Source: Macrostomum lignano (taxonomy: Eukaryota). Taken from it: a stretch of DNA of 64,000 nt. Below, piece after piece: positions 17,704 through 38,550 of this stretch; position 1 is the first letter of the stretch; each line of letters opens with the position of its first letter. The position numbers and the translations under genes are program-made. The notes under the pieces were generated by a model. The model was not told the DNA's origin and searched no databases. It worked only from the letters and a program-made list of their open reading frames with translations. The stretch is taken from positions 186,001 to 250,000 of the forward strand of contig NIVC01001066.1 of the NCBI GenBank assembly GCA_002269645.1, in the 5' to 3' direction.

Positions 17704-19893
17704 TCAGTAGGCCACATCATCCGCGCCCACAATGCCCACAAACGGGATGCTGCTGACGTTGCAGGCACCCTTACCGGCGAAGATAAGCACGCACTCGGCA
17801 TTTCCTGACTGTCTGCAAGACCTGCTGAGCTTTGGGGTGCGCTCTGCTTGACGGTGCTCTGGTTTTAAGACGTACTGACAGCGAATTTTGTTGTTGTTCT
17901 TGTCATTGAATGCTACGAGCTCGTAAAATGCACATTGTTGCTGTCGCTGTTTTGCTATTGATCGAATGTACTCGTTTGTGTACTCGTAGAAAAACATCCT
18001 GGGTCGATGGCATATACATGTACACATGATGGATCAGTATGAATACATGTACGAAGCTACATATGTGTTATCGAACGTACTGCATGTACGCTCGTAAAAG
18101 ACAGTAAAAAAATCTCGCAGGAAAGTTAGGGATTATACTTTAATAATTATTAATTATATTTTACACATCTATTTTTTATTATAGTAGAAACTGGCAGAAA
18201 ACATATGCGCACTCGTCCATGCAATAGGAAAGCATGCATTAGTTTATTGTTGTCTTCGGCATTCTGCGTTATACAGCTGTTAAGATGCCACTTAACAGTT
18301 TTGGACACTACTGATTGCCCTGCGGCCTGCTCTGCTGAACCGCTTCGTCAATGCGATAGGCTTGACGACTTTTCCATAGAGCGTCTGGCAGCGTGGTCCC
18401 GTTCATGTACTCCATGGTGCGCTGAGATGAGCACTGTTGAACCCGGTGCAGCGGGCCGCAGGTGCTGCAGTAATAACGCTTGCACTGCATCCCGCTCGAC
18501 GTAGTGTAGAACAGGCTCTTTGGCGGTCCGTAGAATTCCAGCTGCGCTGTAGAGAAAGTACGTTTCTTGCGTTGGTGCTCCAGTCAGCGATTTAACCACT
18601 AGGCCGTTCCAATTGGTAGCTATCCCGGAATACTCCTGACCATTCGGAGAGCTACCACTGAAAGACCTTCCAGTTGGTTGCTATCCCTCCTACTGACCAT
18701 TCGGAGAGCTACCACTGAAAGACAGCGACAGTTGGTTGCTACTATCCCTCCTCCTGACCATTCGGAGAGCTACCACTGAAAGACCTTCCAGTTGGTAGCT
18801 ATCCCTCCTCCTGGTCCGAGAGCTACCACTGAAAGATCTTCCAGTTGGTTGCTATCCCTCCTCCTGACCATTCGGAGAGCTACCACTGAAAGACCTTCCA
18901 GTTGGTAGCTATCCATTCCTCTTGACCATTCGGAGAGCTACCACTGAAAGACCTTCCAGTTGGTAGCTATCCCTCCTCCTGACCATTCGGAGAGCTACCA
19001 CTGAAAGACCTTCCAGTTGGTAGCTATCCCTCCTCCTGGTCCGAGAGCTACCACTGAAAGATCTTCCAGTTGGTTGCTATCCCTCCTCCTGACCATTCGG
19101 AGAGCTACCACTGAAAGACCTTCCAGTTGGTAGCTATCCCTCCTCCTGGTCCGAGAGCTACCACTGAAAGATCTTCCAGTTGGTTGCTATCCCTCCTCCT
19201 GACCATTCGGAGAGCTACCACTGAAAGACCTTCCAGTTGGTAGCTATCCCTCCTCCTGACCATTCGGAGAGCTACCACTGAAAGATCTTCCAGTTGGTTG
19301 CTATCCCTCCTCCTGACCATTCGGAGAGCTACCACTGAAAGACCTTCCAGTTGGTAGCTATCCCTCCTCCTGGTCCGAGAGCTACCACTGAAAGACCTTC
19401 CAGTTGGTAGCTATCCATTCCTCCTGACCATTCGGAGAGCTACCACTGAAAGACCTTCCAGTTGGTAGCTATCCCTCCTCCTGACCATTCGGAGAGCTAC
19501 CACTGAAAGACCTTCCAGTTGGTAGCTATCCATTCCTCTTGACCATTCGGAGAGCTACCACTGAAAGACCTTCCAGTTGGTAGCTATCCCTCCTCCTGAC
19601 CATTCGGAGAGCTACCACTGAAAGACCTTCCAGTTGGTAGCTATCCATTCCTCTTGACCATTCGGAGAGCTACCACTGAAAGACCTTCCAGTTGGTAGCT
19701 ATCCCTTCCTCTTGACCATTCCTCTTGAGAGCGAAAACTCCAGAAAACTCCCAAAAACCAAAGACCGATAGATGTACTAGCTATCGTACGTCTTTTATCT
19801 TATGAGTTAAAATCTCAATCAAATCGAAAGCTACTCACGGTCCTCAACGAATCCAGTGTACGGCTCCGTATCTCTACCAGTCTTCTTGGCCAT
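17704..19893 (-). CDS. Unidentified spliced gene: exons 19893-19839, 18546-18312, 17998-17704 (or to donor 17775)
   Basis: MAKKTGRDTEPYTGFVED|PQLEFYGPPKSLFYTTSSGMQCKRYYCSTCGPLHRVQQC...GNQ|MFFYEYTNEY... Phases 1 and 2 match; donor GTGAGT and acceptor TTTCTCTACAG are good, the second donor (GTAGTG) is weak. No family recognised. Confidence 0.45.
18603..19730 (+). repeat. ~57-bp tandem repeat (CTACCACTGAAAGACCTTCCAGTTGGTAGCTATCCCTCCTCCTGACCATTCGGAGAG)n
   Basis: About 19-20 visible units; intronic in the model above. Confidence 0.95.
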
Positions 19894-20027: not shown

Positions 20028-23000
20028 TTAGCCGCCAACCATGCCCCCCGGGGTAAGAAGTTTTGGTGAGAAGCTGTCGATAAAAATACACGTGGGCGTG
20101 TACTCTGGCCCAGCAGCTACAATGTACATCTGGTCAGCTATTCTCAGTGGGCCACCTGCCATTGTGCTCCTTTTCTCTCAAACTGGAACAGTTGAACCCT
20201 AAGGCATTTCTAGTCAATGTATATGCACTCCACTATAAGTAATGATGATTGTGCTACTATGAGTAGCAGTCAAGAATATGAGCCCTGGATGACACACGTA
20301 GTAGCTCGTAAATACAAGAAATTTAACCCCCTTGAGAAGTTGAGAAATGTATTTAGATAAGTTGAAAAGACTAATTATGATTCATCGGCTAAAGCTACAT
20401 GTAAGTCTGTCGAGCCTAGTTCTAGAAGCTACACAAGCGGATCACACCGAAGACAGTCAAAACTTGATACTAGTGAGATCGCCGAAAGACTCATAGAGTT
20501 CGACGGCGACGCCGCGCGGTGCTCAACAATCATTAGAGATTACTCGTAATTCAGGTCTAAACTGGTTGAGCCAAGCGTCCGCCAGACTCGCCTAGCTAAT
20601 CAGCTTGTTGGCTTTTTTGTCCAAAAGAAGTCAACAACCCAACCCCTAGGATCTTGCGGGACACCTGCTTCTGCTCGGCAGTGCCTGATCCCTCCTAGAA
20701 GAAGCGGAATGCTTGGTTGGAGGACAGCGGTGAAGCCCCCATGGCTAGAGGCAGAGTCAGAGGGATAGCAGCTCAGACAAGCCACATCCGGAACGAACTG
20801 CTTTTGTAGTCCCTAACAGAGGCTACTTGGAAGTACCACCGTAACTGTTAAACATACTGTGAGTTGCGCCACTTTGCATGCCACCAGCCCGCATATTTGT
20901 GTAGACGCAGAAATTCAAAGCTACGGATGGGACTATGGATAGACAGTGTAGAGAATTCAAGTATATATTGGTCTACCGTTTTGCTCGATTGCATTGCTCA
21001 GTGACTCTTGGTTCAACTCTGGTCTATATTACAGTGTCCTTAGTGCTAAAAAGGGCTGAGATTCTTTGAGAATAAGCTTAGGAAGGTAGGCGGCACAGCG
21101 GCAGGATGCAAGTCCAATCGCTGCTGTTATTGTTGGTGCTCTGCGTCGGAGCAGCCACTTTTGCTGCCGGTGCCAGCGTGAAAGCACCCGAATTGAGTAA
21201 GTACAACCTAAATATGATTATATTTGGTGATTAGTCCAAAAATATCCAATCTTAATAACCAAGTTACTGTATGTACATGTGACCAATAACTGAAGCCAAC
21301 GGATGCAAATCGATCGAGTAAATCGGGACCGGGTTTTCTTTGCATTGCTTCGCTGCATAATCTGCATACACCATCGCAAACACAATTATACCAAATGCTC
21401 ATGTGACCTATTCAGTAGTCTGTTTAAGTAGTATCATTCTTGTTAAAAATCATTCGCTTCCATGCAAGATGGATTGAAGAACCAACTTGTCAATTAAAGA
21501 GTTTGTTCAGGGTTCAGTTCATCGGTAGTTGTCAATTCAAATGCTTTTTTTATACGAACTATAGTGTGCTCGAACCATCGGCTTGATTTGCAGAATCTTC
21601 ACAGTCGCAGGCGTGCATCATCAACAAACGAAAAATCATGGAGGCTGCCCGCAGGTACTACAAAGCGCAATACGACACGAAACTGCTCCTCTTGAAGCTG
21701 CAGCTTCGTCGCCAGCAGCTGGCGGAGAAGAGAACCCCGCACCAGCGCAGAATTCGACGCCGAATTTCGAGATTTAAGCGCCGTGTGCAAAAGGTGAGGA
21801 AGTTGTTTAAAAGGAAGCTCAGGAAAGTTACGAAGAGGTATCAGCGAAAGGTTATGCGAAAGCTGAAGGTGAAGCCTCTGTCGAATCGAAGGATTCGCTT
21901 AGTGCAGAAGGCCTTCTTCAGAAAAGGTATCATCTCAAAGAAGGCGGAGAGAATCGCTAGAAAACCAATCAGGCTAAGGCCGTTCATTCAAGGAAAGACC
22001 ATCTGCAAGTCCCAAAGACTAAGACGAGACCTGAGACGGCTGAGGTCTCCTTGAGTCGACCGAATAACCAGACGAATTTTGAGGAAATATCAAAGGAAAG
22101 TGAGAAGAGAGATGGACAGAAGATTGAGACAGCAGAAGAGAAAGACCCGGCGTTACGTAGTTACTCAGGTTGACCGTCAACTCCGTAGACTGATAATTCA
22201 CAAGTGCTGCAGGGGTCGTGGAAGACGTCATGTACTACGGCGCAAAATCAAAGCGCTTGTGAGACACTTCCAAAGTCGGGTAGGCAATGTTCGGCGCGGA
22301 AGAAGCCGTAAAATTGTCCGCAGCTTGATTCGGCGTTATCGAAAACCTCTACGAAGAAGGCTGAGAAGGATTCTACGCCAAGTAAAGCACCGGAGTGGCA
22401 GTAGGAGAGGTAGACAGTACAACAGACAGATTAGACGAATTGTTAGGCGAATTTTGAAAAGCCGACGACCGGTTCTCAGACTTCTAAGAAGGCGTACTAG
22501 ATACCAATCCAGAAGGCGCATTAGGCCCGTAACAACCAGCAAGCGTTGGCGACTGCACCGTCGAAGAGTGCTGAGACAGCGAAGGCAACTCATCAAGAAG
22601 AAAAACCGGATCTGTGGGTATACAAAATCTGGTCGACCGTCGAAACGGGGCAAAAAATCAGGCAATTTTCTAAGTTGAGGGTGGAAAAGCAGACAAGACG
22701 CAAGCTAATAAGACGATTTGAAAAAATTAGTAGACGTCGTCGTCCAGAAGTAAAAAGGCGTCTCAGTCGAAGGCGACGAACAAAAGTAAATCGACGCCGA
22801 GCACAACGGAAGAGCCGGAGAGTCAGCCGTACAAGAGTGATTAAAAAAGTTCAGCGCCTGGTTGTCAAAGCCAAGAGAGCACTACTCATCAGTTTGAAGC
22901 AGAGGCGCACTGTTCGACGCATTCGAAGGCGTAGACGTTCTCTGAGACGCCGTTTGAGGAGGATCATCTCGAAGAGGCGCCGGTTGAAACGACGAATTAC

Positions 23001-26000
23001 CCTGGTCAGGGCCAGGCGCTCGAGATTGATTCAACGGATGCAGAAGCTCAAACGCAAAAAAGCTATCATCAACAACATGAGGAAGGGATCAGTTATCGAG
23101 AACGTCACGCGTAAGACTGTTCGAATTGATAGGCGCTTGCGCCAGCTGGCAAAACGCATTACGAAGTGCACAAAAAATATCTTCCATTTGAAGCAAAGAA
23201 AAGTCAGAATAAAGCAGAGAATTATTAAAATCTCTATCCGTCGTCAAACGCTAAGGAAACGCGGTGCTCGATTTTGCGAAGAAAGGCTCGACGTCAGCTT
23301 AAAACGTTCAGAAAGCTGAACAGAAAAAAGCGGAGATTTACTAGAGGCGTGATTAAACGAAAACTTGTCAGTCGCAGAACCTTTTTCCGGGTTGAAAGAC
23401 AATCCAGCCGAGTGCTGAGGCGTAAAACCAAGCTAGTTCAATCCAAGCGCAGAAGAAGAACGGCTTCAAAAGGACGGCGCCGCTCTCGCCGAGTTGTTGT
23501 CACTCGAAGGCTGACTGGTATGCACAGGAGGTGAACAGTATCTAGAGTGGTTAAGACATTCCACTGACTGGCCAAGAGAGTCACCAGCGCTGCCCGGAGA
23601 AAGCTAGTCAACCGAAGTAGAATCCTTCGAATTCAGAAACGCCGAATTGTGTTGTTGAAGCGACGTGTCAAAAAAATTACGCATCGCGCTCGCGTTCTGA
23701 AACGGCGAGTAACGGTGATAAAAATCCGTCGCAGAAAGCTGTTGAAGCAGCTGAAACGAGTCCAGACAAAAGGAGGACCAAAAAATGCTTTCAGACAAAT
23801 TGTGAGGAAAATATCCGTTTGCGGTCGGCGCATTCGACGGCTGCGCGTGCGAAGAATTCGGCTGAGAAGACGCATCAATAGAGCCATTCGCAGGCGCAGA
23901 GTCTTGAGGGCCAGAGCGCGTACAATCCAGCGCAGAATTGTTAGACAAGATCGAACTGTGAGCCGTTTGTATAAGAGGATTTTAGTCAGGAATATCCAAT
24001 GGAAGCTTATTGGTAAAGAGACAATGCGACGCATTGAGAAAAACAATTTGAAGGTTACATCAAGGGCAGGTAGGAGAATTTACCGGCGAAAGAAGGTCAT
24101 AAAGAAGCCATTTGTTCTGATCGGCAAAAGCAGAAAGCTGATACAGGTAGCCAAGCGTGCAGCAAAGGAGTTGAAGAATGTTAACAAAAGAGTAGAGCGC
24201 ATAATTCGAAGAATTCTCGTCACTAAGCGACGAGTTGGTCGCCTTAAGAGACAGACGCGATATCTGAGGCGCAGTATTCAACGCATCACTCAAAGAAGAG
24301 CAACTGTTAAAAAGTACATGGCAAAAGTCAGCACTAAGCGAGCACTTCTTATTAAGCGCCTAACTCTGCTCAAATTAGGAACTATTCAGAAGAAGAAATC
24401 TGGAATGTCGGTGCGCATTCTAACCCCCAATAAAAGAAAGATAAATCTGGTGTCCCGACAAATCGCCAGGTATACAAGACGGCTTCAGAGAGTGTCTAGA
24501 AGAAACATACAGTTGAAGGCAAGGATTCGCCGCATTACAAGCAGGCGACAGCGACTTAAGAAACGGGTGCTAATGCAACGGGTGCTAATGCTCAAGAAGA
24601 AGACTCAGAGAAGAAAAGTCCGTTTTAACACGCTGCTGAAACGATTTCAGAGGCGAATCGTAAAGTACAATGCCACTAATGCAAGGGTCTTGCGCTACGC
24701 AGTGCGACAGGCGAAGATCCGACTGACCAAGCGCGTTTTGTACCTGAGCAGAACGAAACAGCTTGGTAAGCATCTCAAACAAGGAAGGAAAGCGACGAAA
24801 AAAGCAAAAAAATGGATTGCTACTAACAAAAAAATCGCCAAAAAACGTGCTGTGCGACAAATCAAGAAAATACGGCTCGTATATAAGAGAATCGCACGCG
24901 CTAAAGACAGAGTGCTGGCTAGCAGACACCGAGTTCTTGTCATTAGACGACGCAGCGTTCAACTGAAGCGAAGAATCCGCAGAATCAAGGCCAGGAGACG
25001 TCGATTGAGACGGTGCATTAGGAGAGCCGATAAAAAAAGAAGAAAGCTCATCGAGCGACTCAAACAATTGAAGAGGAAAAAGTTAATAGTGCGAAGACTC
25101 TTGTCCTCGAAAACAAAGAGTAAAATTGTGATAATATACAGGATCAGCCGAATCAATACTGGTATCAAGCGACTGACTTACAAACTATCGACCTGTACTT
25201 CACGAATTGTGAAGTATAAAAGAAGGCGCGTCCAGCTAAAGACCCGAATTCGTAGAATCTCCAATCGGAAGCAACGTCTTCGCCGTCGAATAAGTTCAGT
25301 GCGCAGAAAGACGCGTCGGCAGGAGCGCAAGGTCCGACGGCTTGTTCTTAAGAAGCGACGCTTCACGAAACGAGTGTTGCGCAGGAAGCTTATTAGTCAA
25401 TCAACGATTACTCGAACATCAACGAAAAGCCGCCGCATTGTGAAGCGCATAGTCAGTCGAGTTCAAAGACTATTTGCACTAAGGCATGGCGGTAGCAGTC
25501 TCCGCCGAAACCGAAGGCGAAGCGGTCGAGCTGCCCCTGTGTTGCGCTCAAAGCGGATTATCATTTCTGGAACTAAGGTTGTTCTTCCGCGTCTTGTGTC
25601 CCCCAGGAGAAGACCTCGAAAGACGGTTGTAAAACGCAAAGTAGTTCTGATTAAGAAGCTTCGCAGAAGGCTTCTTAAGCAAAAAGCTAAGCTTGCTCGA
25701 CAACTGAATGTTCGAGCTCTGATAAGTAAAGTTGCTCGACGGCGAGTGAAGGTTCGTGTGTCGTTCAGCAAGGTTCTAGGCAGAAGGAAGTTACTCAAGT
25801 TGACAAAAAGTGAGGTAGATGCCAAGAAGCTACTGAAGTCCAAGCGGGCAGTTCCTGTTCGAAATCTAAAGAAACTCCAAGCCAGACTCAAGTCAAAGCT
25901 GCGTGTGCTGAGCCAAAGGGTTGCATCGATGACTCCGGCTTTCAGGAAGCTGGTCAAGATGAAAAAATCTGCCTACTCTGAGGATGAAAACACTATGAAG

Positions 26001-26759
26001 ACGGAAATTACAAGCAGCATTGTCAAGTCGAAGGAGGCCTGTCTGTACACAGCTGCTCAACCAGCAGAAGTGGCTGTACAAAACTGAGTACCAGACGCTA
26101 GTTACAGAGGATTAGAGGAGGGTAAGCGGGGCATTTCCACTACAATTGTTTAAGATATTATACTGACCAATTATTGATAAAAAGAATGTCTCGTTCAATT
26201 CATATGTACTTCAGAATTTGACACAGAAACTAACAAATGGGTTGTGAGATCAACTGAAACAGGTAAGTTTTTAGCTGAGGCGAATCAGAGCGCTGAATAT
26301 TTATGTTGAGTTGCTACTGCACTACTGACTTGTATCGGAATTTTCAGACTGGCCCACTTCAGCCTTGGCTGCTTTAAGGACAGTGCGTCGAAGCGCGATC
26401 TCAAGCACCTAGTTGAGACCAGCTCAGGTATGAGCCTGGCTCGTTGTCTCAAGTTGTGCAAAGACAGCGTCAAAGACATCCGTTCTTCGGCGTGCAAAAT
26501 GGAGTAGAATGCCGCTGCGGCAGCTCCTACGGCAACCAGGGCGTCGGCACTTCGTCCAGCTGCAACAAGCCTTGCCGCGGTGACCCCGCGCACACCTGCG
26601 GAGGTCTACAATGTATGGCATAACAAAATCTACTCGACTGGCCTGACTGGTATTAAATACTTCCTTCTTAGTATTAACATATAATTCGAGGGTTGGCTAC
26701 ATAAATTACATGGTCAGTGGGTCTTAGAGCAAAAAAAATACGCGCCCCTGGGCTGTACC

Positions 26760-26960
26760 GTGAAGATAGCGCGAAACCTGTCAACGAAACGTCTGACCTC
26801 GCCGGCAGGGTGCTTTCCACATCAATCAACAGTACGAATCGCTGTAGATGATGTGGCCTGACAGCTGGAGTCGCCGACGGCGCAAAAGGTCGCTTGAAAG
26901 TGACTTGCTCGTCGCTGATCTTGAAGGGTGAAGGTTGCACGTGGCTACTCGTGACTGTGT
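26760..26960 (-). mobile_element. Degenerate non-LTR retrotransposon 3' fragment (intronic)
   Basis: One minus frame reads LLRRRRLQLSGHII..., like the RRL.(F/W).GH motif downstream of RTE-type RT; interrupted by stops. Confidence 0.35.
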
Positions 26961-27605
26961 ACTGTCCATAGGGACTCATAGTAGAGACCGTGAACTTTGT
27001 TATTTCACAAATACCTGAGATGCTTCATTCTTTTGTTTGACAGAAATAGTACTAGACAACCAAAAGAGTACCTATTTACAACCTATCTGTACCTAATTTC
27101 AATGATGATGGGCACTTGCTGATCCTCAGTTCCCGTGCAATTCCCCTATGGTTCAGTGTATCTTCAGAGTCTTTACTGACAATCCAATCGAACAGGATAC
27201 AAACTGCTCAGCATTGGTTGCTTCCATGACAAGCCGATGCGCGACTTGCCAGAATTGGCACTCACGAGCAGCAGCCTGACACTATCCAAGTGTTCTCAAG
27301 CCTGCAGCAAGCTCGGCTTCAAGTACTTCGGCGTACAGAACGCCAGAGAGTGCTGGTGCGGCAACTCCTACGGCAAGTACGGCTCGGCAGGGTCGGACAA
27401 GTGCCGCTCGGCTTGCAGCGGCAGCAAGGAGGAGACCTGCGGTGGAATTTGGCTCAACAGTATCTTTAAGACTGGACTGGCCAGTGAGTTCTGGCACTGT
27501 TCTGACATTTTGAGATCAAGCATAGCTCAACCACTTCTCAAAAACTACTGATTGCATCAGTACTGCCGCGCTATCTACACATTTTTTAGATTAGCATTGA
27601 ATCGA

Positions 27606-27910
27606 AGGGGGGGGGGTTGTAGACTAGTGGCTCGAGCGTCGGACTCACGACTGAAAGGTCGGGGGTTCGAATCTCGACCCACTCGGAACAATTTGTGTCC
27701 TTGAGCAAGACACTTAACTCCGCATTGCTTCAGTTCACCCAGCTGTAAAAAGGCTGCCAGTATTAGCTGGGGTAATTGAGAGTGTGCGTGGCGACCTCCA
27801 GACCTTGGACCGAACAGCCGTACGCAGCCTTCAGATGCGCCGCGCAATAGCTGCGGCTGAGCTGTCGGTTGCACATCTGGCCATTAGGGCAGGTGTAATC
27901 AATTATTATT
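27606..27910 (+). mobile_element. tRNA-derived SINE with conserved central domain (intron 4 of the KR-WSC gene)
   Basis: A box TAGACTAGTGG, B box GGTTCGAATC, central TGTGTCCTTGAGCAAGACACTTAAC...CACCCAGCTGTAAA motif typical of V/CORE-like SINEs, (ATT)n tail. Confidence 0.75.
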
Positions 27911-29028
27911 TTTGAATTTCAAAACTTCTGCGTAGGGATAATATAATAAGGACTAATAATTAATAAGGATCTTTAAGACAGTAAATTCGAGTTTAATTGA
28001 TTTTTTCACTGGCCCATCTAATTATTTATATTTACTCAGGCGGGGGAAGCGTTACTCTCGAAGTGGCGCAAAACATCAGGACAAATGGCGGTAAGAACGC
28101 GCTTTTAGACTTGTAATTTCGCTTTCGCTTTATTTCTGTTTTTTACGCTCGTACATACTTTTGTGAAATTTATCTTGATACAGACTAAACTGATTTGGTG
28201 TTGGAATATTTAAACTATTATTTTATTGCGTACATATACGTAGCTTTTCTCAGAAACTTGCGAATAAAACTTTGACTTCCATTTTAATTATGATAACAAT
28301 AAAGTGCGAATAAGAAGATAAAAATCTGTTTTTTGGGTTTTAATTCCTTCCAGGCATCGTAACTTGTCGGTAGTTTTTTCGACTTATTTCTTTTTTGTGG
28401 AACTGCTGCTGTCATACAGGTACATACATGTAAGATTAAAATGCAATTTTTACCACTATACAGCTACAGTCATTGGGACTACGACAAAAAGCAAACAGTT
28501 AAAGAGCAAATCTAATATGCGCTTTTTATTACTTCTATTTAGCAACGACAAAATACAGTGTCAGTCAGTCAACAGACAACGTCACAGGGTGCGTTTCAAG
28601 GCCTCGGCGCGAACGTAGGCCGTATCGCCGGCAGTGTCCGGGGCGCCGCGGCATGTGCAGTGGCCCCCCTAGCTAATTGAAAACCCTGGGTACGCCACTG
28701 GTACATGCATGTATGTAGTAACGGGAAACGATTTCTGTAAGCAATTATAAACGCCTTTTACATCCCAAAACTTTTAAAGACTTAAAAAAACGACCGTAAA
28801 TATAGCGTATTTACGGTTAGCTACAGCGATTTTATACGGGAATTTTCGTTAATAATTTACATGTATTCCCCAGGACACAGTCCATTTTATTCGCTTCCTC
28901 TTTCTAATTCAATTCTCTTCCATTAGATTTTGACTCATACTCTCTTTTTGCAATAACAAATATAAAGTAAATATCTAGTATAGATCGACTGGTGCGTGTC
29001 TCTGAGTGCGCTATTTGTGATATCGCAG

Positions 29029-30973: not shown

Positions 30974-31039
30974 TTAGTAGTGCAAAATAATTTTTTTATA
31001 AAACACCTTGAAAACACGAAACTGCTAAACATAAAAAAG

Positions 31040-32680
31040 CACAATGTCAAACATAAAAGAGGCACCATGTCAAACATTACATGGGCACCATGTAAAACAA
31101 ATACGTGACTCTATGTCAAACATTAAAGAGCCACCATGTGAAACATTAAAGAGTCACCATTTCGAACATTAAAGAGCCACCACGTCGAACATTAAAGTGC
31201 CACCATGTCAAACGTAAAAGAGCCACCATGAAGAACATTAAAGAGCCACCATGCCAAACATAAAAGAGCCACTATGTCGAACATTAAAGAGCTAGCATGT
31301 CAAACATTAAAGAGCCACCATGTCGAACATTAAAGAGCCACCATTTCGAACATAAAAGAGCCGCCATGTAAAACATTAAAGAGCCACATTGTCAAACATA
31401 AAAGAGCCACCATGTAAGACATTTAAGAGCCATCATGTGAAACATTTAAGAGCCACCATGTCGAACATAAAAGAGCTACCATGTCAAACCTAAAAGAGCC
31501 ACCATGTCAAACCTAAAAGAGCCACCATGTCGAACATAAAAGAGCTACCATGTCAAACCTAAAAGAGCCACCATGTCGAACATAAACGAACCTTTATGTC
31601 GTACATTAAAGAGCCACCATGTCAAACATTAAAGAGCCACCATGTCAAACATAAAAGAGCCACAATGTCAAACATAGAAGAGCCACAATGTCAGATATTA
31701 AAAAGCCACCGTATCAAACATAAAAGAGTTACCATGTAGAACAAAAAAGAGCCACCATGTCGAACATAAAAGAGCCACCATGTCAAGCATAAAAGAGCCA
31801 CCATGTCAAACATTAAAGAGCCACCATGTCGAACATTAAAGAGCCACCATGTCAAGCATAAAAGAGCCACCATGTCAAACATTAAAGAGCCATGTCAAAC
31901 ACTAAAGAGCCAACATGTCGAACATAAAAGAGCCACCATGTCAAACATTAAAGAGCCACCATGTCAGACATTAAAGAGCCACCATGTCAAACATTAAAGA
32001 GCCACCATATCGAACACTAAAGAGCCACCATGTCAAACATATGTGACTCCATGTCGAATATATACGTGCCTCCATGTCACACATAAAAGGGCCACCATGT
32101 AAAACATATACATATGACTACATAACAAACATTAAACAGCCCACCATGTCGAACATTAAAGAGCCATCATGTCAAACATAAAAGAGCCACCATGTCAAAC
32201 ATTAAAGAGCCACCATGTCAGACATTAAAGAGCCACTATGTCAAACATAAAAGAGCCACCATGTCAAACATTAAAGAGCCACCATATCGAACACTAAAGA
32301 GCCACCATGTCAAACATATGTGACTCCATGTCAAATATATACGTGACTCCATGTCACACATAAAAGAGCCACCATGTAAAACATATACATATGACTACAT
32401 AACAAACATTAAACAGCCACCATGTCGAACATTAAAGAGCCATCATGTCAAACATAAAAGAGCCACCATGTCATAAATTAAAGACCCACCATGTCAAACA
32501 TTAAAGAGCCACCATGTCAAACATTAAAGAGCCACATGTCGAACATAAAAGAGCCACTTTGTCAAACATCTACGAGTCACCATGTCAAGCGTATACATGA
32601 CTCCATTTCAGACATTAAAGTGCCACCATGTCAAACATAAAAGAGCCACCAGCTCAAACATTAAAGAGTCACCATGTCAG
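31040..32680 (+). repeat. 23-bp minisatellite (CACCATGTCAAACATTAAAGAGC)n inside Helitron A
   Basis: Visible, diverged units. Confidence 0.93.
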
Positions 32681-32689
32681 ACACAAAAC

Positions 32690-33670
32690 AGCTATCTGGA
32701 GATGCGTGCTATCTGGGGGTGCTTGCTATCTGGGGGAATGCTTGCTATCTTGGGGGTTCTAGCTATCTGGGGGTGCTTGCTATTAGGTGGATGCTTGCTA
32801 TCTGGGGTGCCTGCTATCTTGGAGTGCTTGCTATCTGGAGATGCGTGCTATCTGGGGGTGCTTGCTATCTGGGGGTGCTTGCTATCTGGGGGTGCTTGCT
32901 ATCTGGGGGTGCTTGCTATTAGGTGGATGCTTGCTATCTGGGGTGCCTGCTATCTGGGGGTTCTTGCTATCTGGGGGTGCTTGCTATCTGGGGGTGCTTG
33001 CTATTAGGTGGATGCTTGCTATCTGGGGTGCCTGCTATCTGGGGGTGCTTGCTATCTGGAGATGCTTGCTATCTGGGGGTGCTTGCTATTAGGTGGATGC
33101 TTGCTATCTGGGGTGCCTGCTATCTGGGGGTGCTTGCTATCTAGAGATGCTTGCTATCTGGGGGTGCTTGCTATCTGGGGGTGCTTGCTATTAGGTGGAT
33201 GCTTGCTATTAGGTGGATGCTTGCTATCTGGGGGTGCTTGCTATTAGGTGGATGCTTGCTATCTGGGGGTGCTTGCTATCTGGAGATGCTTGCTATCTGG
33301 GGGTGCTTGCTATCTGGGGGTGCTTGCTATCTAAGGGTGCTTGCTATTAGGTGGATGCTTGCTATCTTGGGGTGCTTGCTATTAGGTGGATGCTTGCTAT
33401 CTGGGGTGCCTGCTATCTGGGGGTGCTTGCTATCTAGAGATGCTTGCTACTTGGGGTGCTTGCTATCTGGGGGTGCTTGCTATCTGGGGGTGCTTGCTAT
33501 CTAAGGGTGCTTGCTATTAGGTGGATGCTTGCTATCTGGGGTGCCTGCTATCTGGGGGTGCTTGCTATCTGGAGATGCTTGCTATCTGGGGATGCTTGCT
33601 ATCTAAGGGTGCTTGCTATTAGGTGGATGCTTGCTATCTGGGGGTGCTTGCTATCTGGGGGGTTGCTTGC
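32690..33670 (+). repeat. 17-bp minisatellite (GCTATCTGGGGGTGCTT)n inside Helitron A; remnants at ~47720-47920 and ~58430-58700
   Basis: Visible units. Confidence 0.93.
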
Positions 33671-34281
33671 TGTCCTGGGATATTTTTTTGCATTGCACTT
33701 CATTTGAGCAGTTTTTCTATTGTCTATGTGAAGGCTTTATTTGGCCGTCTTTTTGATACTTGTAGAGTGCCAGAGATTCTATCTAGATGCCCCCCATCGG
33801 GGGGCGAAGATTGCTAGTATTTATCTAATTGTGATTTGCGGTGCCAGCAGAAAAATTCTAATCCTGGACTCACTGAAAAACCGAGCCGCTGCAATTCGTC
33901 AACTGAAGCCCATAGTTCATCGATGGAAGTAGGTAAACCATTTGTGTCGTATAATTGCACCTACGAGCTACGCTCGTACAATGTGCTGATTAACTTTTTG
34001 CCTGTAAATTTAGGTTGCGATTTCAGGGGCCGGTTTTAACCTGCTCTGTAATCGTGTTTAGCCGACGGGGCCGCCCCCCTCCGCCCGTCTGTGCGTGCGG
34101 CCCGCGCGTGTGCATCCCTGCCGCAAGGTGGGGTGCTGGGTGCCGGCCGGCAGGCGGGGGTGTTGGGTTGGGGGTGGGCGGCGTCGGCCCCCTTTTATTT
34201 GTGCGCTCACGCTCTCTCGTGCGCGCTGCGAGAGCGCTTTGGCTCGTAAAATTTTTTTGCGACTATCTGGCTCTGGCTATC

Positions 34282-35298
34282 ATGCATCGTGTGGACCGAC
34301 TAACAGTCAAACAACTCAAGAGTGAGCTGGGTAGCCGAGGCCTCTCAACCGCAGGCAATAAGTCGGCCTTGCAAGCCAGACTGAGACAACACGAGGGGCA
34401 GTCACAGCTTCAAGACGGCGGGACATCGGCATTGACATCGGCATCGGCATCGCCCTGTGCGCAGGAGGAGCTCCAAGACCAAGGCCGGGACCCACGGGAG
34501 GCGGACCTGGACGGCGAGATTCGGCGGGCGCAGAAACGGCTGCAGCTCCTAGAGCTTCAAACACGCGAACGAGAGCTTCGTGAACGCGCCGTCGTGACTG
34601 CTCGTACAGAATCAGGTGAGCAGCAGAATCTTTTCGCTGAACTTATCAACCCAACAGGCCCCGTCAGCGCTAGAGCCAACCCCCGGCCGGTCGGGCAGCC
34701 GTGTCTACTCGTCAGAGACTTTGTCGATGATCTGTCAGGCCAGGCTGACGAGCTGCTCACCAGGGGCAGCTCTGGCGGCCTCGTGCTCAAGAAGTCGACG
34801 ACCAAGCTGGACGGCATGACAATTGGGCAGTGGTTCGCCGGCAGTATGAAGGTCCTGCTTCAGATACTTGAAGACACAGCGCCGCAGCTGACCAGCAAGG
34901 GCCAAGTGTACAGCACAACTGAGCAAGTCAAAGATTACGCCCAGTACAATGTCCAGGTGGCCGAGCTATTCGACAGATTCCCAGCGCACCGGGTGATCAG
35001 ATTCGACCATGACTACCGCCAGCACCGCGCAGCCAACAGCCTTCGCTGGGGCAAAGACTGCGCCCAGATGTCGATCAGGCACCTGCTCAGCATTAAGACG
35101 GACCAGTACAATCAGACAGCCAAGCGAAACCAGCCTAGCAACAAGAGCCGCGTCATGGGTCCGCGGACATCCTCAGGCCGCGAGCTGTGCTTGTCCTTCA
35201 ACAGCACCAACGGCTGCATGAGGAGCAACTGCCGATTCCTCCATGCCTGCCGAATCTGTGAGGGCAGCCACTCCGAGCAAAATCACGCAAAAAACTGA
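34282..35298 (+). CDS. Ngaro ORF1 (gag-like): N-terminal SAP domain, C-terminal Cys/His finger, 338 aa from first ATG
   Basis: LTVKQLKSELGSRGLSTAGNKSALQARL (SAP); CLSFNSTNGCMRSNCRFLHACRICEGSH. Confidence 0.85.
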   Translation: MHRVDRLTVKQLKSELGSRGLSTAGNKSALQARLRQHEGQSQLQDGGTSALTSASASPCAQEELQDQGRDPREADLDGEIRRAQKRLQLLELQTRERELRERAVVTARTESGEQQNLFAELINPTGPVSARANPRPVGQPCLLVRDFVDDLSGQADELLTRGSSGGLVLKKSTTKLDGMTIGQWFAGSMKVLLQILEDTAPQLTSKGQVYSTTEQVKDYAQYNVQVAELFDRFPAHRVIRFDHDYRQHRAANSLRWGKDCAQMSIRHLLSIKTDQYNQTAKRNQPSNKSRVMGPRTSSGRELCLSFNSTNGCMRSNCRFLHACRICEGSHSEQNHAKN

Positions 35299-35321
35299 GC
35301 AAGCGCGCCGACACGGCGCGC
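35289..35321 (+). promoter_or_regulatory. Candidate -1 programmed ribosomal frameshift signal at the gag/pol junction
   Basis: A_AAA_AAC heptamer in the gag frame just before TGA, 7-nt spacer, 8-bp all-GC hairpin GCGCGCCG-ACA-CGGCGCGC; the -1 frame is the pol frame. Confidence 0.75.
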
Positions 35322-35372
35322 GAAACCGATTTTACCCCTCCTGCTTTTAACTGCCTCGCTCAGCCCGCTCCC

Positions 35373-37934
35373 GTGCCCTGCATCGTCAAGCCTCCAGTGC
35401 GGAAGTCCGATCTGACGCAGCCAGTGGGCGATCTCTGCATCGACGCCTGGCGCTCCGAGCTTGTGGGCGACCCCGACGCTGATTTTATTCTCGACGGCAT
35501 CGAGAGCGGCTTCTCCATTGTCGATGACTTCGACTTTACGCCGTGTCTCTGCAGCAACTACCAGTCCGTCAACCGGAATCGCGACCAAGTCCAAGCTGTT
35601 ATCGGTGAAGAAATCCGGCTCGGGAGGTACGTCCCAGTCGTGGACAAGCCTGCGATGGTCTGTCCGCTGGGAGCCATTCCGAAAGACAGCTCCGGCATCC
35701 GGCTAATCCATGATTGCTCCGTCCCTCGCGGCTGCAGCCTGAACGATCACTATGCCCAACAACGGCGTCTCCGCTTCACCTCCGTCGACGAGGCCGTCAG
35801 GATGATGCAGCCCGGCTGGTTTATGGCAAAGGTGGACATCGCGTCAGCCTACCGCAGCGTGCCAATTTCTCCGCAGTGCTACCAAGCCACCGGCATCCAC
35901 TGGGACTTCGGCAATGGCTGCTCAACCTTCCTGGTGGATACGCGGTTACCATTCGGCAGCAGAGCCTCCGTCAGCATTTTCCATCGCCTCACGCAAGCGG
36001 CCCGGCGAATGATGTGTCGCAAGGGGTTCCTGGCAACCGTCGTTTTCATCGATGACTTCCTCGTCATGGCCAGGACGAAAGCCGAGTGTGACAGGGCCTA
36101 CCACGAGCTGCGCAACCTGCTCACCAGGCTTGGCTTCACCATCAACGAGAAAAAGTCGGTGCCGCCGACGACAAAGCTGCGATTCCTCGGCATTGACATC
36201 GACACCGTTCAAGCCAGTCTTTCCTTCCCAGCCGACAAAGCCGAAAAGCTTCAGCTTCTCCTTGACACCTGCCTCTCGCGGAGGAGCCTGTGCAAGGCGG
36301 AACTGCAGAAGCTGCTCGGGCACCTCAGCCACTTGTGCACTGCCGCCCAGCACGGGCGAACTTTCCTGCGGCCGCTGATCGAGCTGGTCAACAGCCTGGC
36401 GCATCCGTCCGACAGGGTCGGCGTCACGGAGGAGCTCCAGTCGCAGCTGAGGTGGTGGATGACCGCGTTGAGCACGCTGCCGCCTAGAGCTGCCTGGCCC
36501 TCGCGTCGGCCGGCTGGAGCGATTGAGTCTGACGCCTGTGACATTGGAGGCGGTGCTGTGCTGCATTTCGTCGACAGAGAACCGGTTTGGCTCTACATCG
36601 ACTGGCAGTCCGACTGTGATGGCGCGTTCAAGGAGCTGCACATCAACCTCAAGGAGTGCGCCGCCCCGCTGGTTGCGATTCTGCAGCACCAAGAAGCCTT
36701 CAGCGGCTGCTCGGTTGCAGTCTACACTGACAGCACCGCCGCCTGCGGCATCATTAACTCGGGTTCCGCCAAGCACCAAGGTATTGCCGACCTGCAGAAG
36801 CGCGTCGCCCTGACCTGCATTCAACGCGACATCATCGTCCGCGCGCACCATGTGCCTGGCCGCTTCCAGCTGCTCGCAGACCCGCTGTCCAGAGCGCATG
36901 ACCCCAGCCAGCTTGCCAACTTTCTGTTTCGCTTCTATGGCACCTGCTATGTGCCAACCAGCTTGCTTGCCTCCGCTTGCTTGAGCTCTGCCGCTGCCTC
37001 CCACCTTCTGTTTCAGGTCCGCCTCCTGTGGTCCCGGGTCCCGGCCTCTCCGCACCGGCACGTCGACTGCTCAGCCAAGGCTTCGCCAGCTCAACTCGCT
37101 CCGCCTACGCCAGCCAGTGCGCGTCCTGGATGCGATTCTGCGCCGCCCACAGACTTCAACCGCTGTCAGCGCAGCCCGCCGACGTGTGCAACTACCTGGC
37201 GGAGCTGGCGAACAACCGGCTGTTCTCAGTCAGCAGCCTATCCTGCCACCTCGCCGCCGTGTCTTGGCTCTACAAATCAAACAGCGTGGCTGACCCGACG
37301 AGGCAGCCACTGGTTCAGCTTGCCCTGCGCGGCGCCCGCCGGCTCCTCGGCGCCGCCCCAAGGAGCAAACGAGCGTTGCGGCCGGCCGACCTGCAGCGGC
37401 TGCACGGCGTGCTGCGACCTGAAGAGCCCAGGGACTGCGCATTCTGGTGCGCCTGCATCGTGGGCTGGTGGGCCATGCTACGGCGAGCCAACCTGTGCGT
37501 ATCCGGCCGGTTCGATCCGCAGCGAGACCTCAGTGCGAGCTGCATCCGGCCGTCAAGGGCGGGCGTCATCCTCGTCATTCCGAGGTCGAAGACCAACCAG
37601 TTCGGGGCGCGCCAGCACCGAGTTTTCTTGCCGCAGCTCCCAGACGGACATCCACTCTGCCCGGTCACCGCGCTCCAGAAGCAGCTGCGCATTAACCGAC
37701 CGCAGGACGCCCAGCATCACTTGTTCAGTACCCGAACCAGACGGTCCACCGCACCGCTCACCGCGCGCACCTTCGCGAGGCGCCTGTCCGCGGCACTTCG
37801 ACAGGCCGGGTTCGCCGAGCCAGCCAGGTTCTCTGGGCACTCGTTGCGTCGAGGTGGCGCTACATCCGCGGCGGAGGCCGGCATCCCCATCGATTCAATC
37901 ATGCGAGTCGGTGACTGGGCAAGCAGCGCTGTAG
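35373..37934 (+). CDS. Ngaro ORF2: reverse transcriptase + RNase H (no ATG start; frame open back through 35289)
   Basis: RLIHDCS, KVDIASAYR, LPFGSRAS, FIDDFL, FLGIDID; RNase H IESDACDIG, VYTDS, ADPLSR. Confidence 0.93.
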   Translation: MPCIVKPPVRKSDLTQPVGDLCIDAWRSELVGDPDADFILDGIESGFSIVDDFDFTPCLCSNYQSVNRNRDQVQAVIGEEIRLGRYVPVVDKPAMVCPLGAIPKDSSGIRLIHDCSVPRGCSLNDHYAQQRRLRFTSVDEAVRMMQPGWFMAKVDIASAYRSVPISPQCYQATGIHWDFGNGCSTFLVDTRLPFGSRASVSIFHRLTQAARRMMCRKGFLATVVFIDDFLVMARTKAECDRAYHELRNLLTRLGFTINEKKSVPPTTKLRFLGIDIDTVQASLSFPADKAEKLQLLLDTCLSRRSLCKAELQKLLGHLSHLCTAAQHGRTFLRPLIELVNSLAHPSDRVGVTEELQSQLRWWMTALSTLPPRAAWPSRRPAGAIESDACDIGGGAVLHFVDREPVWLYIDWQSDCDGAFKELHINLKECAAPLVAILQHQEAFSGCSVAVYTDSTAACGIINSGSAKHQGIADLQKRVALTCIQRDIIVRAHHVPGRFQLLADPLSRAHDPSQLANFLFRFYGTCYVPTSLLASACLSSAAASHLLFQVRLLWSRVPASPHRHVDCSAKASPAQLAPPTPASARPGCDSAPPTDFNRCQRSPPTCATTWRSWRTTGCSQSAAYPATSPPCLGSTNQTAWLTRRGSHWFSLPCAAPAGSSAPPQGANERCGRPTCSGCTACCDLKSPGTAHSGAPASWAGGPCYGEPTCAYPAGSIRSETSVRAASGRQGRASSSSFRGRRPTSSGRASTEFSCRSSQTDIHSARSPRSRSSCALTDRRTPSITCSVPEPDGPPHRSPRAPSRGACPRHFDRPGSPSQPGSLGTRCVEVALHPRRRPASPSIQSCESVTGQAAL

Positions 37935-38005
37935 AGCGGTACCTACCGCCTTCGGTTGAGCGCGGTGCGCCGCTGCGCCTGGCTTCACTCCTCCCCTCAG
38001 CGTGA
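36977..38005 (+). CDS. Ngaro ORF3: tyrosine recombinase overlapping ORF2
   Basis: AMLRRAN (Arg), SKTNQ (Lys), CPV, FSGHSLRRGGAT (HxxR), VGDWASSAVERY (catalytic Tyr). Confidence 0.93.
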   Translation: MLELCRCLPPSVSGPPPVVPGPGLSAPARRLLSQGFASSTRSAYASQCASWMRFCAAHRLQPLSAQPADVCNYLAELANNRLFSVSSLSCHLAAVSWLYKSNSVADPTRQPLVQLALRGARRLLGAAPRSKRALRPADLQRLHGVLRPEEPRDCAFWCACIVGWWAMLRRANLCVSGRFDPQRDLSASCIRPSRAGVILVIPRSKTNQFGARQHRVFLPQLPDGHPLCPVTALQKQLRINRPQDAQHHLFSTRTRRSTAPLTARTFARRLSAALRQAGFAEPARFSGHSLRRGGATSAAEAGIPIDSIMRVGDWASSAVERYLPPSVERGAPLRLASLLPSA

Positions 38006-38550
38006 CCTCCTCCCTGGTTTGGGATTTTTGGACTCGTTTCGTCCGCTGCCTTTGTCGCCACGCCTGTGCCTTCCCTCTTGCTGCTTTTGGCCCTGTTGGC
38101 TAAGGTTGCGATTTCAGGGGCCGGTTTTAACCTGCTCTGTAATCGTGTTTAGCCGACGGGGCCGCCCCCTCCGCCCGTCTGTGCGTGCGGCCCGCGCGTG
38201 TGCATCCCTGCCGCAAGGTGGGGTGCTGGGTGCCGGCCGGCAGGCGGGGGTGTTGGGTTGGGGGTGGGCGGCGTCGGCCCCCTTTTATTTGTGCGCTCAC
38301 GCTCTCTCGTGCGCGCTGCGAGAGCGCTTTGGCTCGTAAAATTTTTTTTTATTAATTTTCTTGTAATGCTTTTATTCCGTTGCTTCGTGACTTCCCTTTT
38401 AATCGCCTCAAATCCTAAAATATATTCGCTATCGCAGGACTCGTTTCGTCCGCTGCCTTTGTCGCCACGCCTGTGCCTTCCCTCTTGCTGCTTTTGGCCC
38501 TGTTGGCTAACTTGCTATTATAGACCATAAAGCCATGAACGTCCATCCAT

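What the first reader, a model, noticed from the sequence alone, without database searches (positions are those of the whole stretch)
21106..28373. Giant secreted polycationic protein with a WSC glycan-binding tail
Seen: five separate Arg/Lys-rich ORFs, a signal-peptide exon, a WSC exon and three micro-exons join through five phase-1 introns into one ~1,675-aa model. The ~1,500-aa middle is roughly 40% R+K by eye, nearly free of D/E, not a DNA tandem repeat, and has heptad-like I/L/V spacing. Established: WSC domains bind carbohydrates, and Lys/Arg-rich secreted proteins are core components of flatworm temporary adhesives (e.g. Mlig-ap1). Inference: candidate adhesive, cement, rhabdite/mucus or antimicrobial protein with an architecture I do not recognise.
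Basis: partly seen in the sequence, partly recalled or inferred. Interest (0 to 1): 0.82.

Follow-up and report, generated by a model that had tools for sequence, protein, structure and literature searches.

The report
Broken gene for giant polycationic protein
This flatworm (Macrostomum lignano) locus carries a lineage-specific gene for a huge, extremely positively charged secreted protein ending in a sugar-binding WSC domain, but in this copy the giant exon is broken by stop codons and frameshifts, so it is most likely a young pseudogene.

Summary
The sequence features are real. There is a signal-peptide exon, about 4.5 kb of Arg/Lys-rich coding sequence (38% R+K, 2-3% D/E, 3.5-residue hydrophobic periodicity, predicted all-helical), an intact WSC exon and three micro-exons. 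Five canonical phase-1 introns link them. However, the five R/K ORFs are not joined by splicing. They are fragments of one giant exon (21594-26121), broken here by three in-frame TGA codons, two frameshifts and a pair of indels near its 3' end.

A roughly 95-97% identical second copy from Macrostomum lignano (L001) has Arg codons and the continuous frame at every one of these sites. It carries its own, different lesions. Seven repairs guided by L001 give a 1,676-aa ORF. A second, older WSC exon (26348-26650) is decayed in both copies.

The R/K body has no homologue among 1.84 billion representative proteins and is unannotated. It resembles the KR-rich adhesive Mlig-ap1 only in charge and in carrying a lectin-type domain, and it lacks Mlig-ap1's core domains.

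Verdict: a disabled copy of a novel Macrostomum-specific secreted polycation-WSC gene. No expression evidence was found. An isoform that skips the R/K exon would still encode an intact 165-aa secreted WSC protein in both copies.

The parts
21106..21196 (+). Exon 1: ATG plus a signal-peptide-like sequence (MQVQSLLLLLVLCVGAATFAAGASVKAPEL), ending in phase 1 before GTAAGT
   Evidence: Read. It has an uncharged 19-residue hydrophobic core and small residues at -3/-1 (AAG|A). No SignalP was run. The exon is 100% identical in L001.
21197..21593 (+). Intron 1 (GTAAGT...TTTGCAG), phase 1
   Evidence: It is 99.5% identical in L001.
21594..26121 (+). One giant R/K-rich exon (~1,510 codons when repaired), broken in this window
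   Evidence: Frame map. Collinear alignment to L001, where the frame runs on at each window lesion. An internal repeat alignment crosses the 23260 frameshift without a gap.
22052..22054 (+). In-frame TGA (CGA Arg in L001)
22652..22657 (+). A6 run (A7 in L001): a 1-nt deletion that shifts ORF2 to the ORF3 frame
23260..23261 (+). Extra CG (absent in L001): a 2-nt insertion that shifts ORF3 to the ORF4 frame
   Evidence: The repeat alignment stays collinear across it.
23532..23534 (+). In-frame TGA (CGA Arg in L001)
23565..23567 (+). In-frame TGA (AGA Arg in L001)
23568..26084 (+). Longest intact stretch of the exon (839 codons)
   Evidence: AF2 on residues 281-640 of this stretch gives four long helices with mean pLDDT 82.
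26039..26042 (+). CTGT tandem duplication (absent in L001). It shifts the frame, which then hits TGA at 26085-26087.
26113..26114 (+). Site where 10 nt (ACAAGACCTC in L001) are missing. Together with the CTGT duplication the net change is -6 nt, so the donor at 26121 is again in phase 1.
   Evidence: L001 reads ...SKEACTQLLNQQKWLYKTEYQTLVTDDYKTSEE|GT in phase 1.
26215..26262 (+). Exon 3, a 48-nt phase 1-1 micro-exon (FDTETNKWVVRSTET)
   Evidence: Splice signals. Conserved in L001 with 1 substitution.
26348..26650 (+). Decayed first WSC exon. Its 5' phase is wrong, a mid-exon 1-nt frameshift is shared with L001, and a window-only 7-nt insertion lies at 26607-26613.
   Evidence: Pfam half-matches in two frames. 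Alignment to the WSC2 exon is ~60% identical with non-triplet gaps.
27196..27483 (+). Intact WSC exon (phase 1-1, eight cysteines)
   Evidence: PF01822, E 4.7e-20. 98% identical to NCBI BOX15_Mlig013898g1. Three substitutions against L001. Eight Cys.
27595..27900 (+). tRNA-like SINE-type repeat inside intron 5, read by eye. It is not part of the coding model.
   Evidence: Sequence. Present in L001 too. ARAGORN calls no tRNA.
28040..28090 (+). Exon 5, a 51-nt phase 1-1 micro-exon
   Evidence: Splice sites are conserved in L001.
28354..28373 (+). Last coding micro-exon (...GIVTCR, stop TAG 28371-28373)
   Evidence: 100% conserved in L001 across ~80 nt.

Best explanation
The window comes from Macrostomum lignano or a very close relative. 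Positions 21106-28373 (+) hold a six-exon gene. In its intact form the gene encodes a 1,676-aa secreted protein made of:
- a signal peptide;
- a single 4.5-kb exon giving about 1,470 aa of R/K/I/L/V sequence (net charge about +580) that forms long amphipathic, heptad-patterned helices;
- a short acidic/aromatic linker;
- one WSC lectin domain and a short tail.

Shown: in this copy the giant exon is disabled by three Arg-to-TGA substitutions, a 1-nt deletion, a 2-nt insertion, and a 4-nt duplication plus a 10-nt deletion at its 3' end. It is therefore a young unprocessed pseudogene. At most it can still yield a 165-aa SP-WSC protein if the giant exon is skipped, because all introns are phase 1.

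Inferred: the intact protein acted outside the cell as a polycationic scaffold. It would bind and condense polyanionic glycans or glycoproteins by charge, becoming helical when neutralised, while the WSC domain added specific carbohydrate binding. That role is analogous to, but not homologous with, the KR-rich cohesive glue protein Mlig-ap1.
For: - Organism and second copy: the WSC exon is 98% identical to NCBI 'BOX15_Mlig013898g1 [Macrostomum lignano]'. Its contig (L001) is syntenic with the window at 94-97% identity.
- Lesions: every window stop or frameshift is an Arg codon or a continuous frame in L001. L001 has different lesions: TGA at the position matching window 23643, TAA at L001 6881, five 1-nt deletions and a 7-nt insertion.
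- Indel spectrum between the copies inside the exon: 5 in-frame against 10 out-of-frame, which is the neutral one-third.
- Real coding origin: 839 open codons against at most 226 in shuffles. dN/dS is 0.55, with 28 synonymous and 46 nonsynonymous differences.
- One exon, not spliced ORFs: an internal repeat alignment runs collinearly through the 23260 frameshift.
- Exon structure: five phase-1 GT-AG introns are conserved in both copies. In L001 the frame reads into the 26121 donor in phase 1.
- Repaired ORF of 1,676 aa.
- Helical and heptad character. WSC domain.
- Functional analogy: Mlig-ap1 has KR regions plus a lectin domain, and adhesion is blocked by heparin (PMC6410801).
Against: - No RNA evidence was available. 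Neither the joining of the R/K exon to the WSC exons nor expression of either is shown.
- The only annotated product at the paralogous locus is an unspliced 119-aa WSC ORF.
- The A6/A7 difference, and the 1-nt deletions in L001, could be long-read assembly errors. The substitutions to TGA are unlikely to be.
- dN/dS of 0.55, and exon divergence (1.8%) below that of introns 4 and 5 (4-4.6%), show some constraint after the copies split. Decay is therefore recent or partial.
- Without an outgroup, the direction of the 26039 and 26114 indels is inferred.
- The body contains 30 R-x-K/R-R motifs and 252 dibasic pairs. It would be exposed to proprotein convertases in a secretory pathway.
- The proposed function rests on composition and analogy only.
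Confidence: 0.68

Rival explanations
1. The locus's working product is a small secreted WSC protein. Exon 1 would be spliced directly to exon 3, the WSC exon and the tail exons, giving 165 aa. The giant R/K exon would be a phase 1-1 cassette that is now dead, was only ever optional, or belongs to a separate transcript.
For: - All introns are phase 1, and the exon-skipped ORF is intact in both copies, with 4 aa differences in 165.
- The small exons carry no lesion in either copy, while the R/K exon carries 7 in the window and 8 in L001.
- The NCBI model at L001 is WSC-only. It would not be the longest ORF if the transcript contained the R/K exon.
- M. lignano prostate glands express a small SP+2xWSC protein, RNA815_80.4 (PMC4490696). 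It is 26% identical over 73 aa to this WSC, pairwise E 1e-4.
Against: - Zero lesions in 2 x 498 nt is not significant, given 1.66 lesions per kb in the R/K exon (expected 1.65, P about 0.19; my arithmetic).
- In L001 the R/K frame reads exactly into the phase-1 donor, as expected if it was spliced to the WSC exons.
- The annotated 119-aa ORF runs through the 27484 donor into the intron, so it reflects an unspliced RNA.
Confidence: 0.25
2. The gene is functional. The lesions would be assembly or polishing errors among near-identical paralogues, or an intact allele or third copy exists that makes the 1,676-aa protein.
For: - A6/A7 is a classic homopolymer error. Many L001 lesions are 1-nt deletions.
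- dN/dS is 0.55 and the exon is less diverged than introns 4 and 5.
- An in-frame 507-nt (8 x 63 nt) expansion in L001 keeps the frame.
Against: - Three substitutions to TGA in the window and two nonsense substitutions in L001 are not typical assembly errors.
- The CG insertion, CTGT duplication, 10-nt deletion and 7-nt insertion are not homopolymer slips.
- The indel spectrum is neutral.
- No predicted protein matching the R/K body exists in 5.8 billion clusters or 1.84 billion representatives.
Confidence: 0.15
3. The five R/K ORFs are separate exons joined by short introns inside 21594-26121.
For: GT...AG pairs of 39-63 nt that restore the frame can be found at each break.
Against: - Those candidates lack the GTAAGT / pyrimidine-CAG signals of the five clear introns.
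- The 'intronic' stretches keep encoding R/K-rich peptide in frame.
- L001 reads straight through each site with an Arg codon or one or two more or fewer bases.
- The internal repeat alignment is gapless across 23260.
Confidence: 0.02
4. The R/K protein is intracellular, for example a nucleic-acid-condensing sperm or nucleolar basic protein. It would start at Met 21638, and the signal-peptide and WSC exons would belong to another gene.
For: - An ATG at 21638 opens the first R/K ORF.
- The extreme Arg content resembles nucleic-acid binders (general knowledge).
- Many furin-type motifs would be awkward in the secretory route.
Against: - A strong intron (GTAAGT...TTTGCAG) links the SP exon in the matching phase, and the frame is open from the acceptor.
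- The 3' end reads into a phase-1 donor in L001.
- Mlig-ap1 shows that secreted KR-rich giants exist in this animal.
Confidence: 0.07

Closest known systems
Mlig-ap1, the cohesive adhesive protein of Macrostomum lignano (Wunderer et al. 2019, PMC6410801; Pjeta et al. 2021, PMC8621496)
   Same: Same animal. Both are secreted giants with an extremely basic Lys/Arg-rich bulk, combined with a carbohydrate-binding module. The expected behaviour is the same: electrostatic binding to polyanionic glycans.
   Different: - Mlig-ap1 KR regions are Gly/Ser/Pro-type short low-complexity repeats ('GRK', e.g. SRKPRRKNRKSRKP), more than 3,600 aa long, flanking a C-type lectin + vWD-C8-TIL + EGF core.
- Here the body is 25% I/L/V, 3% Gly and 1% Pro, heptad-patterned and predicted helical. 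It is Arg-dominated, the only domain is WSC, and no vWD, EGF or C-type lectin is found.
- No sequence relationship was detectable. The Mlig-ap1 sequence itself was not at hand for a direct test.
- This copy is a pseudogene.
RNA815_80.4, a prostate-gland-specific small secreted protein of M. lignano with two WSC domains (Arbore et al. 2015, PMC4490696)
   Same: Same species. Both have a signal peptide followed by WSC domains. This locus has two WSC exons, one of them decayed. The exon-skipped product (165 aa) would be of the same kind. The signal peptides end alike (FAAGA).
   Different: It is a different gene: 26% identity over 73 aa, a different (AT-richer) sequence and no R/K exon. Expression of the present locus is unknown.
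WSC domain family (Pfam PF01822): yeast Wsc1-type cell-wall sensors, fungal glucan-binding proteins, and animal KREMEN, polycystin-1 and WSCD1/2
   Same: Exon 27196-27483 is a full-length WSC domain with eight cysteines.
   Different: None of the architectures I know of in this family combines WSC with a ~1,470-aa polycationic helical region (my knowledge, not tested exhaustively). The closest database protein is only the paralogous M. lignano fragment.

Membership tests
WSC domain (PF01822) | Profile match above Pfam's gathering score over the whole domain | tested here: met
   72.0 bits against a cut-off of 27.8, profile positions 2-82 of 82, E 4.7e-20 for 27180-27548
WSC domain (PF01822) | Eight conserved cysteines | tested here: met
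   Eight Cys in the exon peptide
WSC domain (PF01822), second copy at 26348-26650 | Uninterrupted domain in one frame | tested here: not met
   The N-terminal half is in frame 0 (E 0.0036) and the C-terminal half in frame 2 (E 2e-11). The frameshift is shared with L001, and the window has an extra 7-nt insertion.
Mlig-ap1-like flatworm cohesive adhesive proteins | Core of C-type lectin + vWD-C8-TIL + EGF repeats (PMC8621496) | tested here: not met
   Pfam scan of all R/K ORFs and the flanking exons finds only WSC
Mlig-ap1-like flatworm cohesive adhesive proteins | Long Lys/Arg-rich, extremely basic regions of Gly/Ser/Pro-type low complexity | tested here: inconclusive
   The body is extremely basic (R+K 38%, net charge about +578), but it is hydrophobic-rich, heptad-patterned and helical rather than GRK-type
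Mlig-ap1-like flatworm cohesive adhesive proteins | Sequence homology to Mlig-ap1 | not testable with these tools
   The Mlig-ap1 sequence is not held as text. Library searches with the R/K body return nothing at all.
Mlig-ap1-like flatworm cohesive adhesive proteins | Expression in adhesive gland cells and presence in footprints | not testable with these tools
   No transcript or proteome data could be queried
Unprocessed pseudogene (duplicate-copy decay) | Premature stops or frameshifts relative to an otherwise collinear paralogue, with introns retained | tested here: met
   Three TGA codons, a -1 shift, a +2 shift and a +4/-10 indel pair in the window, against L001. The introns are present.
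Unprocessed pseudogene (duplicate-copy decay) | Neutral substitution and indel pattern | tested here: inconclusive
   Indels are 5 in-frame against 10 out-of-frame, which is neutral. dN/dS is 0.55, and exon divergence is below that of introns 4 and 5.
Alpha-helical coiled-coil-like proteins | Heptad (3.5-residue) hydrophobic periodicity and predicted long helices | tested here: met
   FFT peak at 3.50 residues. AF2 gives helices at residues 7-113, 118-233, 237-335 and 339-359 of the fragment, mean pLDDT 82, from a single sequence. Oligomerisation was not tested.
Secreted protein | N-terminal signal peptide | tested here: inconclusive
   A hydrophobic core with small -3/-1 residues was read from the sequence. 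No signal-peptide predictor was available.

The most novel reading that the evidence does not exclude
An intact copy or allele exists elsewhere in M. lignano or a sister species, or the R/K exon is still expressed. It would make a previously unannotated class of secreted protein: a ~200-kDa, +580-charge, heptad-patterned helical polycation with a WSC lectin tail. Such a protein would act as a glycan-condensing glue, cement or seminal-fluid scaffold. It would have been built by inserting one giant phase 1-1 exon into a small SP-WSC gene.
Probability: 0.2. Interest if true: 0.7.

Novelty: new variant of a known kind. Interest (0 to 1): 0.4.

Why it matters
Only one polycationic secreted giant (Mlig-ap1) is described in flatworm adhesion, and how its KR regions work is still called enigmatic (PMC8621496). 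This locus shows that M. lignano evolved a second, unrelated polycation-plus-lectin architecture. It has a different physical design (amphipathic helices instead of Gly/Ser/Pro low complexity), and no relative was found in the protein libraries searched.

It is also a clean example of three things:
- a giant symmetric exon inserted in a small secreted WSC gene;
- rapid in-frame repeat expansion (8 x 21 aa in the second copy);
- independent decay of both available copies.

If an intact copy is expressed, it becomes a candidate glue, cement or seminal-fluid component and a template for charge-driven biomaterials. For annotation, it warns that the attractive 1,675-aa model cannot be translated from this sequence.

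Tried and rejected
- Word-indexed homology searches with ORF5 and with the repaired N-terminal 398 aa. Both had 8,000 candidates saturated by low-complexity words and gave no hit.
- Exhaustive phmmer of ORF5 against 1.84 billion representatives gave 0 hits. HMMER's composition correction may hide weak relatives.
- Exact-product look-ups for the window's HSP70 and for the 812-aa ORF are not on record. The window's own assembly is therefore not annotated in the collection.
- Pfam on all R/K ORFs gave nothing significant.
- Short-intron models for the ORF junctions were enumerated and rejected after comparison with L001.
- A literature search for Mlig013898 found no paper.
- I tried to obtain the Mlig-ap1 sequence from the PNAS supplement. 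Only Mlig-ap2 is held as text, and one search was a malformed query.
- RNA815_80.4 was checked as a possible identity for this gene. It is a different gene.
- A structure-library search of the helical AF2 model was not run, because long single helices give uninformative matches.
- Readings considered and rejected:
  - TGA read as a sense codon: both HSP70 genes end in TGA.
  - Coding on the minus strand: the longest minus-strand ORF is 164 aa.
  - A chance ORF in purine-rich DNA.
Full report
**What is in the sequence**

On the + strand between 21.1 and 28.4 kb there are five Arg/Lys-rich open segments: 21587-22051, 22055-22675, 22525-23316, 23229-23531 and 23568-26084.
- R+K is 38-43%, D+E is 2-5% and I/L/V/M/F is 23-30%.
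- TRF finds no tandem repeat apart from a 15-nt doublet.
- Hydrophobic residues recur with a sharp 3.50-residue period, at 15x mean power in the longest ORF. Over the whole body the peak is 10x, a level reached by roughly 1 in 1000 residue shuffles.
- The longest open frame is 839 codons. The maximum in 300 dinucleotide-preserving shuffles of the same 4.5 kb is 226. The sequence therefore is, or recently was, protein-coding.
- The minus strand has nothing longer than 164 aa.
- AlphaFold2 on a 360-aa piece (single sequence, so to be taken with caution) gives four helices of about 100 residues, mean pLDDT 82.

**Flanking exons**

Upstream, an ATG at 21106 opens a signal-peptide-like exon that ends in phase 1 at a GTAAGT donor. 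A TTTGCAG acceptor at 21593 leads into the first R/K frame.

Downstream there are clean GT-AG introns at 26122-26214, 26263-(26347 or 27195), 27484-28039 and 28091-28353. All are phase 1 by my reading of the sequence, checked by translation.

Exon 27196-27483 is a full WSC domain: PF01822, 72 bits against a cut-off of 27.8, E 4.7e-20, with eight cysteines.

Pfam sees it as two halves in two frames. It is about 60% identical in DNA to the intact one, with gaps that are not multiples of three.

**The ORFs do not join by splicing**

ORF1 and ORF2 are in the same frame and are separated by one TGA at 22052. ORF4 and ORF5 are in the same frame and are separated by TGA at 23532 and 23565. ORF2 to ORF3 and ORF3 to ORF4 are frame changes.

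Frame-restoring GT..AG pairs can be found at each break. None has the signals of the five clear introns, and the supposed introns go on encoding R/K-rich peptide. A 33%-identical internal repeat (ORF5 residues 380-640 against 22687-23440) aligns collinearly through the 23260 frame change with no gap. That is what an indel predicts and what an intron does not.

**The second copy settles it**

The WSC exon hits one database protein, 'hypothetical protein BOX15_Mlig013898g1 [Macrostomum lignano]', at 98% identity. Its contig, NIVC01001993.1 of GCA_002269645.1, was fetched as L001. L001 is syntenic with window 17.6-29.5 kb at 94-97% identity. It is a homeologous or paralogous copy, or a divergent allele.

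Window lesions compared with L001:

| Window site | Window | L001 |
|---|---|---|
| 22052 | TGA | CGA (Arg) |
| 23532 | TGA | CGA (Arg) |
| 23565 | TGA | AGA (Arg) |
| 22652 (ORF2 to ORF3 shift) | A6 | A7 |
| 23260 (ORF3 to ORF4 shift) | extra CG | absent |
| 26039 | CTGT duplication | absent |
| 26114 | 10 nt missing | ACAAGACCTC present |

Because of the last two changes, the window's frame runs into TGA at 26085. L001 reads ...SKEACTQLLNQQKWLYKTEYQTLVTDDYKTSEE straight into the GTAAGT donor in phase 1.

L001 has its own, different lesions in the giant exon:
- a TGA where the window has CGA (23643);
- a TAA at L001 6881;
- five 1-nt deletions and a 7-nt insertion.

It also has an in-frame 507-nt expansion, eight copies of a 21-aa unit LKTRIRRISNRKQRLRRRRRV.

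Inside the exon, indels between the copies are 5 in-frame and 10 out-of-frame, the neutral one-third. dN/dS is 0.55, from 28 synonymous and 46 nonsynonymous differences. Exon divergence (1.8%) is lower than that of introns 4 and 5 (4-4.6%). Some constraint therefore acted after the copies split, and the decay is recent.

Both HSP70 genes in the window end in TGA, so TGA is a stop codon in this genome.

**Reconstructed architecture**

Applying the seven L001-guided repairs to the window gives one ORF of 1,676 aa:
- signal peptide;
- about 1,470 aa of R (24%), K (14%), L/V/I (25%), with 3% Gly and 1% Pro;
- an acidic/aromatic linker;
- WSC;
- a 24-aa tail.

Net charge is about +578. A motif R[IL]xRIxxRxQRLxxR recurs six times, which points to old internal duplications.

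The first WSC exon is out of phase and carries a frameshift shared by both copies, so it was already dead before they diverged. The window adds a private 7-nt insertion.

Because every intron is phase 1, skipping the giant exon gives an intact 165-aa signal-peptide-WSC protein in both copies.

**What it most likely is**

Shown:
- The locus belongs to a Macrostomum-specific gene.
- In this copy the giant exon is disabled.
- No protein like it exists among 5.8 billion clusters or 1.84 billion representatives.
- It is not annotated at the paralogous locus. The only model there is a 119-aa WSC ORF that runs through the 27484 donor into the intron.

Inferred: the intact product was a secreted polycation. 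With almost no acidic residues its helices would repel each other until neutralised. The likely partners are therefore polyanions such as sulfated or acidic glycans and glycoproteins, with the WSC domain adding lectin-type binding. That makes it a charge-driven condensing or cohesive scaffold.

This is the logic proposed for Mlig-ap1, whose KR regions bind negatively charged sugars and whose function is blocked by heparin (PMC6410801).

A caveat is that the body holds 30 R-x-K/R-R motifs and 252 dibasic pairs. These would be targets for proprotein convertases.

**Comparison with what is known**

- **Mlig-ap1.** This is not a member of the family. The defining C-type lectin/vWD-C8-TIL/EGF core is absent. 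The basic region is of a different type: hydrophobic, heptad-patterned and helical, against Gly/Ser/Pro 'GRK' low complexity (PMC8621496).
- **RNA815_80.4.** The prostate-gland transcript RNA815_80.4 is a small signal-peptide + 2xWSC protein of the same animal (PMC4490696). It is a different gene, 26% identical over 73 aa. It does show that small secreted WSC proteins are made in M. lignano reproductive glands. That makes the exon-skipped product, and a seminal-fluid context, a live alternative.

**Verdict**

The parts and the five phase-1 introns are real, but the five ORFs are fragments of one broken exon. The architecture is unmatched in the libraries searched and new in detail, but this copy is a young pseudogene, the second copy is also broken, and there is no expression evidence.

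I rate it a new variant of a known kind (a secreted flatworm polycation with a lectin module), of moderate interest.

Noticed in passing
window 187-3335 and 4996-8150: A near-perfect 3.1-kb palindrome. Each arm carries an intronless HSP70 gene (280-2190 minus strand; 6141-8057 plus strand) and a 5S rRNA gene (2860-2978 minus; 5353-5471 plus). The arms are 100% complementary except for a 6-nt indel, which makes the two HSP70 proteins 636 and 638 aa (GRKDEI against GRLSKDEI).
   Followed up: partly
window 34015-38530: A GC-rich (60-64%) DIRS-like retroelement. It has an ORF with a SAP domain, an ORF with reverse transcriptase and RNase H, and an ORF with a tyrosine recombinase (phage-integrase family). 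Repeated ends lie at about 34.0 and 38.0-38.5 kb.
   Followed up: partly
window 41989-57645: A 15.6-kb satellite with a 24-nt unit (GATTATTGCACTTGATAAACCAAG) and 48-, 72- and 96-nt higher-order periods. It produces many spurious long ORFs on both strands.
   Followed up: no
window 18607-19721; L001 991-1952: A 57-nt tandem array (about 20 copies) about 1.4 kb upstream of the gene, present in both copies with different copy numbers. Other arrays: 22-nt at 9023-9988, 30-nt at 10694-11547, 23-nt at 31027-32683 and 17-nt at 32691-33671.
   Followed up: no
window about 27595-27900 (intron 5); L001 about 10355-10660: A G-run followed by a tRNA-like head (…TAGTGGCTCGAGCG…GGTTCGAATCTCGACC…) and a tail containing GTCCTTGAGCAAGACACTTAAC, which looks like a tRNA-derived SINE. 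It is shared by both copies, so it predates their split. ARAGORN and Rfam call nothing there.
   Followed up: no
L001 7447-7953: The second copy carries an in-frame 507-nt expansion in the R/K exon: eight tandem 63-nt units encoding LKTRIRRISNRKQRLRRRRRV. The window has a single unit there (25222-25290).
   Followed up: yes
window 21000-21650 against L001: Divergence between the two copies rises from about 0-0.5% in exon 1 and intron 1 to 4-4.6% in introns 4 and 5. This could reflect gene conversion at the 5' end. It was not analysed further.
   Followed up: no
window 11545-11907 (minus strand): A 120-aa ORF that looks to me like the C-terminal part of a pyridoxal kinase (by eye only, with no Pfam hit at E<=0.001). 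It abuts the 30-nt tandem array.
   Followed up: no
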